A stretch of 43,564 nt of DNA from Polymyxa betae A26-41 (lineage: Eukaryota > Protista > Endomyxa: Phytomyxea): the NCBI GenBank assembly GCA_003693705.1, contig RBZT01000806.1:1-43564 (forward strand). The letters are read 5' to 3'. How positions within the stretch are numbered: position 1 is the first letter of the stretch; every line of letters begins with the position of its first letter. The translations under genes were made by a program, and so were the position numbers. Positions 17,961-23,444 of this stretch are shown piece after piece. Below the pieces are notes generated by a model, which ran no database searches, was not told the origin of the DNA, and saw only the letters and a program-made list of their open reading frames with translations.

Positions 17961-20900
17961 TCACTTAATCTTTCCTTGACGCGGCTTCCGGGCGAGACGA
18001 GTCCTGACTGGCGGGCCTGCGACAGCGGCACTCTGGCGAGGCCGCATCCGACTGGCCGAACTCCTTGCGGGCTGAACATCGCCTTCACGCACCTGATCGT
18101 GATCTCAGTCCGGAGCCAGTCGACGAAACGTAAGCCCCAAGTGCAAGAGTTGACGTAACCCTACCTTATCTTGACCATCGATCGTATCAGCTGGTCCGTG
18201 ATCGATCCCATGTTTAGCGGTGGTGGCCGCGCCATGTAACATAAGCGTGTAGTCTGGGCCGCCAGTCACGGAACACACGGCATCGACGCGCAGTTCCCGA
18301 TTCGGACGTCCGAAGAAGGTGAACTGAAAAGTGCGAGACGCGCCGGGCTCGATGCGCCCGAACAGCGGTTCCACATCCAAGACTATGGTGCGGGTAACGT
18401 CAGCGCCCGTATCGTTAACAGACACCGGAGTTACCTCGAGCGACGTCGTCCGCATGTTCCGGGTCGGCCCGCAGCGACCAGGAGAAATCGGCGGCCAGTA
18501 CGGTCGGGTTGGTGGCCACGACACGTTTTACGGCAAATGTGTTATTCACGATCGTTCCGAAACTGCACGGATGCTGCTCAGTGTAACGAATCGAGACAAT
18601 TCCCAATCTGCGGAACTTGAAAAAACATTTCAAACAAAATGTGCAGCCCAGAAGAGTGCGCTCAGAAAAGTAGGGCGTTGTGCGAATTTATGCGTAAAAT
18701 ATGACAGAGAGATAATACACAGTCACAAAAGTAAAAAGTGCGAGCTTCGAAAAGTGCGAGCTTCGAAAAGTGCGAGATTTGAAAGAGAAAAGTGCGGACA
18801 AAGGATCCGAACTGCCTGTGATGGAAACACGGAACAAGCAGAAATGTGAAATAAATGCGCCCTGCATACTCGATCTGTGTCGGGGACCAGGCCACATTCG
18901 GGTACCATATCTGCGCAGATAGCGGGATGCGATCTCGACCCGGATGATTGACGAAGGCCACCACGAGCTGGCCCCGGACCAGTTCACTGACGCCGGGCTG
19001 CGCCGGACCGATCGGCAACGTGACCTCGACGGAGACCTGTTGGCCCGGGGCCAGCACCACTTCCAGCCGATCGACGGTGAACGGCTGCTTGACGCCGATC
19101 ACGAAGGAGACGGGCAGCGGGGTCACGTTACGCATCACGGTCGTCTTCGACAATGAGCGGACCTGAGCGCTGTCAGCCGTTGAGTCCGTGGCGGGATGCG
19201 TGACACGATACCGTCTGATCGATCTGATGTCGATACTCGAAATGGATGTCCGGCACGGAGAACTCGACGTGCGGGTGCACGAAGGTGGCGAGTAGTTGCG
19301 TGGCGGCCACGGAGTGCCCCTCTTTATCCCCGGAATACAGGCCCACGCAAGTCCAGGACTCATCGATAGTACGGGGACCTGGGCTGCTCCCCTCGATTGT
19401 GAACTGGACGGACTGAGCGGACGCCAGCGTCACTTTATCGGGTCGGAACTGGAACGCGGCCGCCTCGGACCCGTTGTAACGCCAGGTCAGAGCCTGGGCG
19501 CGGACTCCATCGTTCCGTAACGTGAACGTACGCCTAAACTATCATTACTGGATATGATGCGATCACGTTACATGCGCTTACGTGACGGTTTGTACGGACA
19601 TCTGATATCCCATATCGATAGAGGTTAGATCCATATCTGTACATGTGATAGTTGAGCCGAGACCAACAGCTCGGCATTGAACCTGGGCTGCGTCTCCGTC
19701 ATCAACCAGGATGTGAATCAAGTCCCGGAACACGGCATTGTCTTTACATGTCAGATGAACTGTTACCTCCAACTAGTAACCATGGTTACATTACAGATAG
19801 AACAGTCACGCAAACTTAACGACAATATTGCTTCGAAACTTAAAAAAAAATGGAAAGCAGTTGGAAAAAACTGAGAGGAAACTGCGAACGAATTTGCTTA
19901 AGTGATCTGGAACCTGTTGTCCTGGAGCGATTGTTCCCTCTCTCGGAGTCGCCACAAAACTTGAGTAGCGTTTGGCAGCGAATGCTACGAACCGGGCCTC
20001 GATCGGGGTTTCGTTACGCATCGTGAAACGTAATTGGACGGGTTGCAGGACAGGCACGTTGCGGAAATCGAGCAGGTTCCGGGACAGGACCAGGTGCGGA
20101 CCTATCCCGGACCCCGTGATCGACACTTGGAAAGGGGCTGCGCTGTTCCCACAAGTCCGAATGTAAATTCCGATATCGATGTCGCCTGTTGCAGGGATTG
20201 TCAGGTCACAGGATGGTAACGTAAATGTAACGTGAGCGTATCGTTCGTCACGCTGTAACATGAACACTCACCGAGGGCTTCGGCGAAGAAGGTGATCTTG
20301 AGCGGGAACGTTGAGTGCGGCAGAATGGTCGCGGACTCCGTATCGAAGCGGAGGCGGCCCTGACCTTTACGATACATGGTCAGGTCCGTGACGATCTCAA
20401 ACCGGACGGCCAGATCGCTCGAATTCGATAGCTCCAGGACTTGCCCGTACGCATATCTGTAACATCAAGGCCTCAGTTCGAGGCAACTAACGTAAACGTA
20501 ACGTGAATCCTGGGCGCCACACTGCGAAAGGAAGGGAGACAGTCCCCTCAATCATAACAGTAAAAATGCGTCACGATACTGTCAACGTTACCTGACGTAA
20601 CAGCGCCCGAAGTCGACATGTTCGGCGCCGAATTCAATGTCCGGGACCTGACAGACGGCATCGAGCGGAATCCGTAACAGATCCGTTTCCACATCTACAG
20701 GAGACAGCCATCACACTCTCCGACGTAACGCAGCCATATGTCATCATGTTACTTTCAATATCGATACAGATATGGTGCAGATTGTAACACTGGACTGTCT
20801 CGCTGCACAGATCGACCTCGAACTGCACCGTCTGCTGGGGCAGTACGGCCACGACGGACGGACGAATGTCGATCTGCAGTTAAAGGTAGTATCAAACAAG

Positions 20901-23444
20901 ATACGTTACAGGTAACGTCAGTTAAAAAACCCAGAAACACATAATCGAAAAAAAAACGAAAAAAACAACAACAACTCCGTAACGAAACACTGGTGTCACG
21001 TTACTTCACGTTGAAGGAACTTGCCGTCTTGAGGACACCGTAACAGTAATCGGATGGGGATTTCACTCGTGTTACGTAATTTGAACGATCGCGTCGTGAC
21101 AAATCCGTACGCAACCAGACCAAAGTCGAGACGCTCGCAGTCCGCCTCGAACGTCGGCGCTACTACGTTACCGGAGATTGTTAGCGTGATCGGCGTTACC
21201 GAACCCGATAACGTCCATGTTAGAACCTGATTTCAACATTGTTATATTTTTGTAACAGAACATCAGCTGGGAAATGAGTTCGCAAAACAGTTCGGTGCAG
21301 TTAGCAATGACAGTGTGTAAAGCAAATGAAACGTGATTGTAACGAAACCGCAGCGTGAAGAGCGGACGCACCTCATGGAATATTCCGAGCATATCGGTTG
21401 AGAATGTGATAGCAATGGTCCGGGATTGTCCAGATTCTAATACACCATACGATGGGTCGCATACAAACCTGTATCAGACGCACAGATTTAGTCCACTGTT
21501 AAACAAGTGCGGCCAACAGAATTGTAACATTAACCAAAACATTCGATTGTAACATAAACCGAGTGATTCGATAGTAACAGAAATCGACTGATTCCGCAGA
21601 AGCTGTTGGAACAGCGATAAGGAAACGTCAAGTGATGTGTAACATAAGACAGTAAACCGATTCTGTAGTGAACCTTTGTGAGGAATTTGGGACCGTGAGT
21701 GAGAATTCGGCCTGGATCTGTCCGACGTTCTTGAGTACGGCCTCGTAACGATACACGGCGTTAACGTAAACATCTCCGATATCGAGTGTATCGAACGAGA
21801 ACAGGGCCGTCGGCCCGATCCCCTTCCCTGTCAGGCGTAGCGGAAGACGCTGCGAACGGCCTCCCACGTTACAGTACGCCCAGGCCGTATATGTATCCGA
21901 CGCCGATGGGCGAAACGTGGCCGTGAATTCTGAGCCAAACCGTAACGTTAACAAGACAAGCGATCCGCCGTGGAATAAAACCCAAACTATCAATTTGATG
22001 CAGACGGTAACGTGAACAAATGGAAAGCAACATAAGACTGGGATGGTCACGTTACCTATGAATCCGCCCGGATACAGTTCACCGTGGAGCGGCTCGATCG
22101 AGAAGTGCGCGTCCTCGAACAGGATCGGCGGGGCCGCCGCCGTGTCCGGAGTCTCCCCGTGGCCGTGCTGGCCATCGGCACCGGTCAGAGGCTCGGACGG
22201 CGAGTCACACGCATTCCGCATCCAGTTATACGTTACAGGGATATCGCTATCATTGAAGAGACGGAAGCTGGCCACGGTACAGAGATGGATACACGCTGGC
22301 GGTAGATCGACCTGGTCCGAATCCAGACTGATCTCCACATCCTGCACCGTGGCGGACATCTACAGCAACGGATTCAGTGGGTCAATACGCACCCAAAGCG
22401 ACGACGATGGTCCAGCAGAGGCCGAAACATCCGATCGAAAACGTTTCAAACATTTTGAAAGAACTATTCTGCAACAGTAAAAAGAATGTCGGAAAACAGT
22501 TCCGGAATCGATCTGAAAACGATGCCGAAAAAAGTGTTTTTTTGTAAAAAATTGTAAAAAGAACGAAAACTTTCCAGTATGAGCACCGACCTCTATGAGT
22601 TTATGTTGTCGGCCTTTATCGTAGACCAGTTCCATCCGTCCCTGGACATCGCCGGTCATCGGGCCAGCGGCGAACTCGAACTGGACCTGGGCGTGCTGAT
22701 CGGGGACCAGGACGCCCTGGACGGGGACCGCCCGGAACGGGAGGCCGGCCGGCAGACGCATCTCCCAGGCGACCTCGTTGCGGCCCACGTTACGCAGCAG
22801 GTGCGGCTGCATGGTCACATGATTGGCGGGCACCGATTCGAATCGGATCGCATCGGGGAAATCCAGCTGAGCGGGTCGGCCGAGGGCCTCTACGACCACC
22901 TCGAACTGTTCCCGTTCCGTGACGACCACGATCTGACATGCGTAGCTCATGTGTTCATCGGCAGCCGTGAAGGTCACGCGGAACTTGACCTCGATGCCCG
23001 GCGCCACCTGTTGCATGGAAAGTCAACTCAGGAAACCATAATGTAACGAAAACGGGAAACGTAAAAAGCTTGAACGAACGTAGCGCAAAATCCAAAACTC
23101 TGTATGGTAGGTAGGACCTTGGAGGCGCGTTTTCCGGAGGTGAGGAATGGCGAGACCGAGAACCAGGTCGACTCGGGTGGCACGACGCGGACGCGGCGTG
23201 CCACTGTATCGTGATTGCGCAGGCGGACCACGACGCTGACGGGCTCGAACGCCGTATATTCCGTGAACTGAACGCGGGCCGGATATGCAGCAAACAGCGG
23301 CTGCCCGAGCGGCAGGGCCGAGGCCCGGCTCCGCGGTCCTGGAGACGCCGCCGCCGCCACGCCGACATCATCGTCCTCCGCCTTCGTTCGGCCCGGGGAC
23401 GCCGCACGCCCGCATTCGAAACCTTCGGCGCCAGGCGTCATCAT
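17961..23444 (-). CDS. Hydin-like ASH/PapD-repeat axonemal protein, short form (~16 exons, ~1,200 aa by manual exon tally)
   Basis: Colinear with the HYDIN N-terminal region as I recall it: LFAAYPARVQF..LRNHD..RRVRV, KVAPG, VVTEREQFEV..LDFPD, FSIEPLHGELYP, GRSQRLPLRLTGKGIGP..FSFDTLDIGDVY, PTFE..LDFGLVAYGF, VEPLFGRIEPG..FTFFG..GGPDY. Last exon ends PRQGKIK*. Confidence 0.85.
18734..18781 (+). repeat. Intronic 16-bp tandem repeat x3
   Basis: aaaagtgcgagcttcg x2 plus aaaagtgcgagatttg; degenerate aaagtgcg copy nearby. Confidence 0.9.

What the first reader, a model, noticed from the sequence alone, without database searches (positions are those of the whole stretch)
18150..23050. Hydin-like gene is saturated with GTAAC/GTTAC motifs in introns and exons
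Seen: my manual count is about 46 GTAAC/GTTAC in ~4.9 kb (about 38 in 19450-22250). Roughly 10 are expected at uniform composition, and I counted about 6 in the similarly long COPB2 gene. They occur in both orientations, often as CGTAACG/CGTTAC, with many GTCAC/GTGAC too. The enrichment is confined to this gene and runs through coding sequence. It is dispersed, not a tandem repeat. Known: GYAAC is the RFX X-box half-site (ciliary gene regulation in animals; RFX is not known to me from SAR lineages) and overlaps Myb YAAC cores. Inference: a gene-body DNA code (stage-specific factor, chromatin or methylation mark) or an RNA structure code, possibly marking flagellar/zoospore genes.
Basis: partly seen in the sequence, partly recalled or inferred. 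Interest (0 to 1): 0.8.

Follow-up and report, generated by a model that had tools for sequence, protein, structure and literature searches.

The report
Nine-base word overprinted on a gene
The GTAAC/GTTAC excess in this flagellar-type gene is real, but it is one of a few hundred gene bodies in the Polymyxa betae genome that carry the 9-base word GTAAC-R-T-N-A in exons and introns; it is not a mark of flagellar genes, and what reads it is unknown.

Summary
There are 46 GTWAC in 18150-23050 and 34 in the other 38.6 kb. Local Markov backgrounds expect 8.9±3.0 (order 1) and 14.6±3.6 (order 2).

The real unit is an asymmetric 9-mer, GTAAC-R-T-N-A: 19 copies in the island, 1 in the rest of the window.

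The gene is a minus-strand HYDIN/CFAP65-type Ig-repeat gene with about 14 inferred introns.
- Motif density is 15/kb in introns and 5/kb in exons; background is 0.9/kb.
- The exon excess survives synonymous-codon shuffling (18 observed, 7.6±2.4 expected).
- Five of 14 inferred splice donors are GTAAC.

The genome is the Polymyxa betae draft. About half of all ACGTTAC copies sit in roughly 2.5% of the genome, as islands of 0.4-4 kb on functionally unrelated genes (LRR, zinc finger, PX, kinase).

Six other flagellar loci (three HYDIN-like, three dynein heavy chain) show no enrichment. There are no X-boxes and no excess of Myb sites. So the flagellar/RFX reading fails, while "gene-body code" remains the best reading.

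Both orientations share the same flanks, which points to a double-stranded motif. GTTAC is about 2.5 times commoner than GTAAC on the sense strand. Hairpins, introners and tandem repeats do not explain it.

First-stage readers noted this phenomenon repeatedly on other DNA of this genome; none of those notes was followed up. No paper describing it was found.

The parts
18150..23050 (.). GTWAC island: 46 GTAAC/GTTAC, 25 GTAACRT, 19 GTAACRTNA
   Evidence: The rest of the window (about 38 kb) holds 34, 3 and 1 respectively.
19450..22250 (.). Core of the island: 38 motifs in 2.8 kb (13.6/kb). It coincides with the most intron-dense part of the gene.
18105..23444 (-). HYDIN/CFAP65-type Ig-repeat (PapD-like) gene. 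The ATG is at 23444. The frame is open to 18105, and a further donor-like GTAGGG near 18175 may extend the gene.
   Evidence: Pfam PF22544, PF24507, PF14874 and PF23277 on exon pieces. The exon-intron model comes from frame continuity and is inferred; no RNA evidence was available.
21930..22055 (-). Intron 3 (126 nt). The donor is GTAACGTGAC. Its reverse complement lies 37 nt downstream, and a third copy lies 13 nt before the AG. The intron is in frame and free of stops.
20874..21004 (-). Intron 6 (131 nt). The donor is GTAACGTGAC, with two sense GTTAC and one more GTAAC inside.
20695..20752 (-). Intron 7 (58 nt). The donor is GTAACATGA, with an internal CGTTACG.
20457..20591 (-). Intron 8 (135 nt). 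The donor is GTAACGTTGA and the intron ends GTTACAG. With its 10-nt exon flank it folds into one long hairpin (z = -3.5).
18383..18434 (-). Intron 14 (52 nt). The donor GGTAAC pairs with GTTACC 13 nt before the AG (z = -2.3).
21469..21673 (-). Intron 4 (205 nt, donor GTTCAC). It has four sense TGTTAC, three of them in a 25-nt tandem array at 21521-21594.
20186..20271 (-). Intron 9 (86 nt, ordinary donor GTGAGT) with three sense GTTAC.
20217..20235 (-). 19-mer TCACGTTACATTTACGTTA in intron 9. It is 18/19 identical to the copy in intron 8, while the flanks are unrelated.
20488..20506 (-). 19-mer TCACGTTACGTTTACGTTA in intron 8. There are 19 matches with at most 2 mismatches genome-wide, against 2 for the reversed control.
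19776..19789 (.). Perfect 14-nt palindrome GTAACCATGGTTAC, 2 nt before the AG of intron 10. It is not an X-box: the right half is GGTTAC, not RGYAAC.
21005..21226 (-). Exon 6 (222 nt), the exon richest in motifs. Four copies are written through S-V-T, G-N-V, R-N-T and L-L-R codons in three reading frames.

Best explanation
The gene is one of an estimated 250-350 'GTWAC islands' in the Polymyxa betae genome. These are transcribed gene bodies into which a short, asymmetric, double-stranded word, GTAAC-R-T-N-A (read on the other strand as T-N-A-Y-GTTAC), has been written at 10-50 times the background rate.

The pressure is uniform over the gene body. Where nothing else constrains the sequence (introns) it reaches about 15/kb. 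Where the protein constrains it (exons) it reaches about 5/kb, through synonymous codon choice in all three frames.

Most likely the copies act as a dense array of binding sites on the DNA for one sequence-specific factor, which sets a gene-wide chromatin or transcription state for a dispersed set of genes. That set is not the flagellar genes.

I infer that the 2.5:1 orientation bias is a side effect. In the sense orientation the word is a working 5' splice site (5 of 14 donors in this gene), so extra sense copies would be selected against.

Shown: the motif, its statistics, its genome-wide islands, its independence from repeats, hairpins and gene function, and its identical flanks in both orientations.
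Inferred: that it is read as DNA, that a protein reads it, and what the reading does.
For: - Enrichment survives local order-1 and order-2 Markov backgrounds and synonymous-codon shuffling: 18 vs 7.6±2.4, maximum 16 in 2000 shuffles. The same holds in most other island ORFs.
- Specific 9-mer: GTAACRTNA occurs 19 times in the island and once in the other 38 kb. The position matrix from 435 sites has T at -4, A at -2 and Y at -1. Only TAACGT-containing ACGT words are enriched; CRE, G-box and PAR sites are not.
- Both orientations relative to transcription have the same flank preferences: A at -2 in 60% and 60%, Y at -1 in 91% and 91%. Both are therefore instances of one double-stranded motif.
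- Introns carry 15.3/kb and exons 5.1/kb. This is expected if one pressure acts on the whole transcription unit, so the reading happens on DNA or on pre-mRNA, not on mature mRNA.
- Genome-wide: 663 triple clusters, where about 18 are expected from the background rate. There are 3850 ACGTTAC in total. The rate is 0.075/kb on the 265-kb contig C1 and 3.7/kb here, which implies about 670 kb, or 2.5% of the genome, in islands.
- 24 further islands were seen in 14 of the 20 loci fetched around cluster matches.
- Sense-oriented copies serve as donors in 5 of 14 inferred introns. Outside the island only 2 of 34 GTWAC have the GTAACGT form.
Against: - No factor, chromatin or expression data exist.
- Binding-site clusters for transcription factors normally lie in promoters, not in coding exons. 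The promoter and first 650 nt of this gene are almost free of the motif.
- A 2.5:1 bias relative to transcription (60:24 in 15 ORFs; 19:3 among non-donor intron copies) is what a nascent-RNA element would show. My splice-site explanation of that bias is untested.
- In this gene's exons the two orientations are equal, 9:9.
- Conservation in related species could not be examined.
- The exon-intron model is inferred from reading frames only, and intron 2 could not be resolved.
Confidence: 0.35

Rival explanations
1. Nascent-RNA element. The sense-strand form U-N-A-Y-GUUAC is read on the pre-mRNA by an RNA-binding protein that marks these transcripts for regulated splicing, nuclear retention or decay. 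This would work like the clusters of U(U/C)AAAC (DSR) bound by Mmi1 on fission-yeast meiotic transcripts.
For: - Sense GTTAC outnumbers sense GTAAC 60:24 in 15 island ORFs, 15:4 in the intronless LRR ORF, and 19:3 among non-donor intron copies here.
- Density is higher in introns than in exons, which fits a nuclear, pre-mRNA-level reading.
- The islands follow gene bodies rather than promoters.
Against: - The minority orientation is still about 5-fold above background.
- It carries the same flanks as the majority. A single-stranded RNA element does not predict this.
- In this gene's exons the ratio is 9:9.
- Part of the bias follows from T>A skew on the sense strand.
Confidence: 0.25
2. Neutral molecular drive. 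A sequence-specific mutational, repair or conversion process active on certain transcription units creates the word, without any function. In effect it would be analogous to the way uptake sequences or very-short-patch repair distort k-mer use in bacteria.
For: - The word is overprinted on unrelated genes, in all reading frames, and uses rare codons: 4 of 9 TTA leucine codons lie in GTTAC.
- Near-cognate words are also enriched: ACGTTTC 8-fold, ACGTTAG 13-fold.
- Island genes share no evident function, and the rate of Pfam hits matches controls: 6/30 vs 6/20.
Against: - No known eukaryotic process writes a specific 9-mer.
- ATGTTAC is enriched 14-fold but its strand-mirror decay product ACATTAC only 2.3-fold. 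The variants are therefore not simple CpG decay.
- In the paralogous loci L018 and L019 (76-78% identical), 5 of 8 aligned motif copies are kept, against 33% for 5-mers in general. This is a very small sample.
Confidence: 0.15
3. RNA hairpin code. GTAAC donors pair with nearby GTTAC, masking 5' splice sites or looping out introns and so regulating splicing.
For: - In the minimum-energy folds, all five GTAAC donors pair with a downstream GUUAC.
- Introns 8 and 14 fold significantly better than shuffles, z = -3.5 and -2.3.
- The intron 11 copy faces its complement in the next exon, across the 3' splice site.
Against: - Eight of ten introns fold no better than dinucleotide shuffles, z from -0.5 to +2.0.
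- Inverted pairs within 100 nt are not in excess: 156 observed vs 166.8±9.2 when orientations are shuffled.
- There is no preferred spacing.
- The intronless LRR ORF is an island too.
Confidence: 0.07
4. Introner or MITE origin. The motif is the terminus or subterminal repeat of a small mobile element that created these introns.
For: - This gene is intron-dense (14 introns in 5.3 kb), and 5 donors carry the word.
- Intron 8 begins GTAAC and ends GTTAC-AG after an exon ending AG.
- A 19-mer is shared by two introns, and seven identical copies of a close variant lie on other contigs.
Against: - There is no similarity between motif-bearing introns beyond about 10 nt.
- Shared 13-mers with 34 other loci are barely above controls, 100 vs 60-83.
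- Exons and an intronless ORF are enriched as well.
- Most motif copies are not at intron ends.
Confidence: 0.05
5. One reading: an RFX- or Myb-type site cluster that marks flagellar or zoospore genes.
For: This gene is flagellar-type. Another first-stage note reports an island on DRC2 (not checked here).
Against: - All six other flagellar loci sampled are at background.
- There are 0 X-boxes. The preceding base is Y in 32 copies and R in 14. YAACKG is not enriched, and TAACGG occurs 0 times.
- Other islands lie on LRR, zinc-finger, PX and kinase genes.
Confidence: 0.03

Closest known systems
DSR clusters (U(U/C)AAAC repeats bound by Mmi1) on fission-yeast meiotic transcripts
   Same: A short word is repeated many times, dispersed, inside gene bodies including coding sequence. 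It marks a functionally mixed subset of genes and acts in the nucleus. (From my own knowledge of the literature.)
   Different: DSR is strictly sense-strand RNA. Here both orientations are enriched with identical flanks, the word is different, and no reader or phenotype is known.
Homotypic clusters of transcription-factor binding sites
   Same: Many copies of one short double-stranded motif, in both orientations, within a few kb.
   Different: Such clusters normally lie in promoters or enhancers. Here the promoter is empty and the copies fill exons and introns at up to 15/kb. None of the consensus sites tested fits: X-box, Myb, and CRE, G-box and PAR bZIP sites.
Over-represented oligonucleotides written into coding DNA of bacteria (DNA uptake sequences, Chi)
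   Same: A specific 8-10-mer is overprinted on genes regardless of reading frame, shaping codon and even residue choice, with an orientation bias.
   Different: Those are genome-wide and tied to uptake or recombination in bacteria. This is a eukaryote, and the word is confined to about 2.5% of the genome in gene-sized islands.
Subterminal transposase-binding repeats of DNA transposons (e.g. AAACGG in Ac) and introner elements
   Same: Short motifs occur in both orientations at high density over a few hundred bp. Some copies supply splice donors.
   Different: The host sequence is a conserved multi-exon gene, not a transposon. There are no terminal inverted repeats, no target-site duplications and no extended family similarity.
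Bulged 5' splice sites recognised by U1 snRNA
   Same: GTAA-C-GT can pair with the canonical U1 5' end ACUUAC if the C is bulged. All six U1 genes of this genome have that canonical end, and 5 of 14 donors use the word.
   Different: Donors account for only 5 of 46 copies. Most copies are antisense or lie away from any junction.

Membership tests
RFX X-box | Imperfect palindrome GTNRCC N0-3 RGYAAC | tested here: not met
   0 matches in the island and 1 in the rest of the window. The 14-nt palindrome at 19776 has GGTTAC, not RGYAAC.
RFX X-box | Half-site RGYAAC (purine before GYAAC) | tested here: not met
   YGTAAC 32 vs RGTAAC 14 in the island. T is the commonest preceding base.
Myb binding site | YAAC(G/T)G core | tested here: not met
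   1.63/kb in the island vs 1.72/kb outside. TAACGG occurs 0 times, TAACGT 22 times. The base after AAC-R is T in about 60% of copies.
bZIP ACGT-core dyads (CRE, G-box, PAR/C-EBP) | Palindromic TNAC|GTNA with both halves required | tested here: not met
   Across all islands: TGACGTCA 0, TCACGTGA 0, TTACGTAA 2. Only TAACGT-containing words are enriched 7-22-fold. RTTAYGTAAY occurs twice in this island.
Tandem repeat or microsatellite | Head-to-tail copies of a unit | tested here: not met
   The only tandem arrays carrying the motif are two overlapping 25-nt rows at 21521-21594, about 3 copies in all, holding 3 of 46 motifs. (GTAAC)3 with at most 1 mismatch occurs only 9 times genome-wide, against 3 for the control.
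Introner / MITE family | Introns sharing extended sequence, terminal inverted repeats and target-site duplications | tested here: not met
   Similarity is limited to about 10-19 nt. Shared 13-mers are near the control level. Exons and an intronless ORF are enriched too.
DSR-like nascent-RNA determinant | Motif copies only in the sense orientation of the transcript | tested here: inconclusive
   Sense bias is 60:24 and 19:3 among non-donor intron copies. The minority orientation is also enriched and has the same flanks.
DSR-like nascent-RNA determinant | Marked genes share stage-specific expression and selective removal | not testable with these tools
Flagellar-gene regulon mark | Other flagellar genes of the same genome carry the mark | tested here: not met
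   The HYDIN locus on C50 and two further PF22544 loci have 0.3-1.6/kb. Three dynein heavy chain loci have 0.5-1.2/kb.
HYDIN/CFAP65-type flagellar Ig-repeat protein (the gene itself) | Repeated HYDIN/CFA65/VesB-like Ig (PapD-like) domains | tested here: met
   PF22544 is above its cut-off in three exon pieces (E 4e-10, 1e-8, 5.7e-6). PF24507 exceeds its cut-off in one piece; PF14874 and PF23277 give only sub-threshold hits. A relative 69% identical carries the same domains.

The most novel reading that the evidence does not exclude
Polymyxa betae uses a gene-body address code. A 9-bp word is written into the exons (by synonymous and perhaps even residue choice) and introns of roughly 300 otherwise unrelated genes. 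A dedicated factor reads it and switches that gene set as a block during the parasite's life cycle. The alternative that is just as novel is a eukaryotic molecular drive that writes one specific oligonucleotide into chosen transcription units.
Probability: 0.3. Interest if true: 0.85.

Novelty: new variant of a known kind. Interest (0 to 1): 0.62.

Why it matters
If the word is read by a factor, it defines a previously unseen regulon of a few hundred genes. The organism is an unculturable root parasite that vectors rhizomania virus, and almost nothing is known about its gene regulation. The word would give a simple sequence handle (GTAACRTNA density per gene) for finding that regulon's members.

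More generally, a motif dense enough to bend codon choice across whole genes is rare in eukaryotes. It offers a clean case for separating selection on DNA or pre-mRNA from selection on protein.

If it is instead a neutral drive, it would be a new kind of sequence-specific mutational process.

For annotation, it matters that GTAAC-type donors and many decoy copies occur in these genes, because gene finders trained on ordinary donors will mis-model them.

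Tried and rejected
- An unbiased dynamic-programming gene model with a small codon table read through most introns and was discarded. The model used was curated by hand. Intron 2 (about 22570-22360) has no in-frame GT-AG solution and is left open.
- The joined spliced protein was never sent to any search tool. Exons were searched piece by piece by reference. 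Joining was done only inside scripts, for counting and codon shuffling.
- Variant U1 snRNA complementary to GTAACGT: rejected. All six U1 genes begin ATACTTACCT.
- Branch-point reading of GTTAC: the distances to the AG are compatible, but the word does not pair with the conserved U2 GUAGUA box, and other introns use CTRAY-like sites. Dropped (reasoning).
- Hairpin code: rejected as a general rule.
- Repeat or introner family: rejected.
- Pentamer microsatellite or telomere-like array: rejected.
- C-to-T conversion of GTSAC into GTWAC: the mismatched partners in the paralogous loci L018/L019 are not GTSAC.
- CpG-decay origin of ATGTTAC: rejected, because ACATTAC is not enriched.
- Orphan-gene enrichment: island ORFs have Pfam hits in 6/30 and control ORFs in 6/20, no difference.
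- Orthologue DNA from relatives:
  - One 69%-identical fragment exists in run ERR13337903, but its DNA could not be served.
  - A metagenome scan with the protein found nothing.
  - A second protein word search found nothing.
  - A metagenome scan with the 19-mer returned 120 stretches that look like chance matches or unrelated satellites.
- Known RNA families in the gene: none. The best hit has E 0.15.
- Literature: no paper mentions the word or GTWAC in this sense. The plasmodiophorid genome papers I read say nothing on it.
- The large representative-protein search was not used.

Full report
**Observation**

The window holds 80 GTWAC, and 46 of them (29 GTAAC, 17 GTTAC on the + strand) lie in 18150-23050.

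Chains simulated from the island's own composition give 8.9±3.0 (order 1) and 14.6±3.6 (order 2). No simulation came near 46. Only an order-3 model, which already contains the motif's own 4-mers, approaches it.

An unbiased k-mer comparison with the rest of the window puts GTAAC first among 5-mers (46 vs 4.5) and ACGTTAC/GTAACGT first among 7-mers (18 vs 0.3).

Tandem Repeats Finder finds only one small 25-nt array carrying 3 of the copies, so the motif is dispersed.

**What the motif really is**

I aligned 435 copies from this and 24 other islands. The resulting matrix has T at -4 (56%), A at -2 (57%) and C or T at -1 (88%) before GTTAC. On the other strand this reads GTAAC-R-T-N-A.

The motif is asymmetric.
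- Among ACGT-core octamers, only those containing TAACGT are enriched, 7-22-fold.
- CRE, G-box-like and PAR sites are not enriched.
- In the window, GTAACRT occurs 25 times in the island and 3 times outside. GTAACRTNA occurs 19 times and once.

**The gene**

Exon pieces on the minus strand match the HYDIN/CFA65/VesB-like Ig domain and related CFAP65, PapD-like and DLEC1 Ig families. A 69%-identical fragment from a related organism exists in a public run.

From stop-free segments and frame continuity I derived a model of 15 exons and 14 introns, with the ATG at 23444. This model is inferred:
- Intron 2 (about 22570-22360) has no in-frame GT-AG solution.
- The joined protein was not sent to any search. 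Exons were searched piece by piece.

**Where the copies lie**

- Introns hold 27 copies in 1759 nt (15.3/kb). Exons hold 18 in 3510 nt (5.1/kb). The window background is 0.9/kb.
- Five of the 14 donors are GTAAC (introns 3, 6, 7, 8 and 14).
- Outside the island only 2 of 34 GTWAC have the GTAACGT form. These donors are therefore part of the island phenomenon, not the organism's usual donor.
- All six U1 snRNA genes have the canonical ACTTACCT 5' end. GTAA-C-GT can pair with it only with a bulged C.
- In exons the copies occupy all three frames and use, for example, CGT-AAC for Arg-Asn and the rare TTA leucine codon.
- Shuffling synonymous codons within the gene gives 7.6±2.4 (maximum 16 of 2000) against 18 observed. 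For the 7-mer it gives 1.35 against 6.
- Exonic copies are not clustered at splice junctions (P = 0.16).

**It is a property of the genome**

The assembly has 27,085,814 bases in 1001 contigs, matching the published Polymyxa betae draft of 1,001 contigs and 27,085,946 bp (PMC6328671).

- Three GTWAC within about 75 nt occur at 663 places. Roughly 18 are expected from the background rate (my estimate).
- ACGTTAC occurs 3850 times in all. The rate is 0.075/kb on the 265-kb contig C1 and 3.7/kb in this gene.
- About half of all copies must therefore sit in about 670 kb, or 2.5% of the genome: an estimated 250-350 islands (with the island density).
- I fetched 20 regions around cluster matches. 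Fourteen of them hold 24 further islands of 0.4-4 kb with the same extended motif.
- First-stage notes describe the same thing on EF-G2, ABCA, DRC2, 4-TM and kinase genes. None of those notes was followed up, and I did not check them.

**Not a flagellar mark**

- The other HYDIN/CFAP65-type loci (a HYDIN gene on C50 with open frames up to 1717 aa, and two more) have 0.3-1.6 GTWAC/kb.
- Three dynein heavy chain loci have 0.5-1.2/kb.
- Island ORFs carry LRR, C2H2, PX, kinase and a weak endonuclease/phosphatase match. Most have no Pfam family.
- Random non-island ORFs are just as often without a family, 6/20 with a hit against 6/30.
- There is no X-box. The base before GTAAC is mostly a pyrimidine. 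Myb YAACKG is not enriched.

**DNA or RNA?**

Two facts pull in different directions.

First, there is a bias relative to transcription.
- In 15 long island ORFs, sense GTTAC outnumbers sense GTAAC 60:24.
- In the intronless LRR ORF the ratio is 15:4.
- Among non-donor intron copies of this gene it is 19:3.

Second, the minority orientation is itself well above background, and it carries the same flanks as the majority. This is what a double-stranded motif predicts and a single-stranded RNA element does not.

Pairing between the two orientations is not the point.
- Inverted pairs are not in excess: 156 vs 166.8±9.2.
- There is no preferred spacing.
- Only introns 8 and 14 fold better than shuffles.

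I therefore favour a DNA-level word. My explanation of the bias is that sense copies are usable donors and would be selected against away from true donors. This is inference.

That introns are denser than exons shows that the pressure acts on the whole transcription unit. Any reading therefore happens on DNA or pre-mRNA, not on mature mRNA.

**What it is not**

- Not a repeat family or introner. Similarity between motif-bearing introns stops at about 10 nt, apart from one 19-mer shared by introns 8 and 9. Shared 13-mers with other loci are near control level.
- Not a microsatellite.
- Not CpG decay. ATGTTAC is 14-fold enriched and its mirror ACATTAC only 2.3-fold.
- Not a known RNA family.
- No paper in the library mentions it.

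**Verdict**

The flagellar/RFX/Myb interpretation is wrong. The general idea of a gene-body code stands as the best reading (0.35). A nascent-RNA determinant (0.25) and a neutral sequence-specific drive (0.15) are serious rivals.

The decisive data are stage-resolved stranded RNA-seq, orthologue comparison within plasmodiophorids, and binding assays with double- and single-stranded forms of GTAACGTGA.

Noticed in passing
window 22360-22570: The second intron of the gene has no GT-AG pair that keeps the frame between '...GAHTGK' and 'MSATVQDVEISL...'. It could be two short introns with a micro-exon, a non-canonical site, or an assembly error in a T/A-rich stretch.
   Followed up: partly
window 21930-22055: Intron 3 is 126 nt, a multiple of three, and free of in-frame stops, so a retained intron would insert 42 residues without breaking the protein.
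   Followed up: no
window 18734-18784: A 16-nt unit AAAAGTGCGAGCTTCG is repeated 3.2 times (94% match) inside the 262-nt intron 13. That intron holds no GTWAC at all.
   Followed up: no
window 18967-19055: A GC-rich inverted repeat with 15-nt arms (93% complementary, 59 nt apart) lies inside exon 13. It gives only a weak, non-significant microRNA-precursor match on both strands (E 0.15-0.2).
   Followed up: partly
G000 contigs C80, C254, C476, C722, C735, C848, C933: Seven identical copies of TTACGTTACGTTTATGTTA, plus one near-identical copy on C673. Several lie within 1 kb of a contig start, which suggests a dispersed repeat or multi-copy gene that carries the word.
   Followed up: no
L021-L026: Six U1 snRNA genes, about 196 nt, below Rfam's gathering score (41-48 bits). 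All have the canonical 5' end and fall into two or three sequence variants in stem-loop I.
   Followed up: partly
L018:1764-3834 and L019:2367-4974: Two short contigs (C4, C11) carry paralogous sequence, 76-89% identical. A trio of GTAAC copies about 28 nt apart is kept while the spacers diverge.
   Followed up: partly
L003:3927-5132: An intronless 402-aa LRR ORF holds 19 GTWAC, 15 of them sense GTTAC. Most encode the Val-Thr of repeated (N/D)-V-T positions, and others use Met-Leu or Leu-Leu with the rare TTA codon. The word may be shaping residue choice there.
   Followed up: partly
L138 and L097 (metagenome contigs): Unrelated environmental contigs carry satellites built from CGTAAC-type units, one of about 30 nt and one at both contig ends. 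They were found only because they match the 19-mer pattern, and no link to Polymyxa is shown.
   Followed up: no
L010:7281-7715: An island ORF gives a weak endonuclease/exonuclease/phosphatase match (E 3e-4, below cut-off). It could be a retroelement endonuclease remnant.
   Followed up: no
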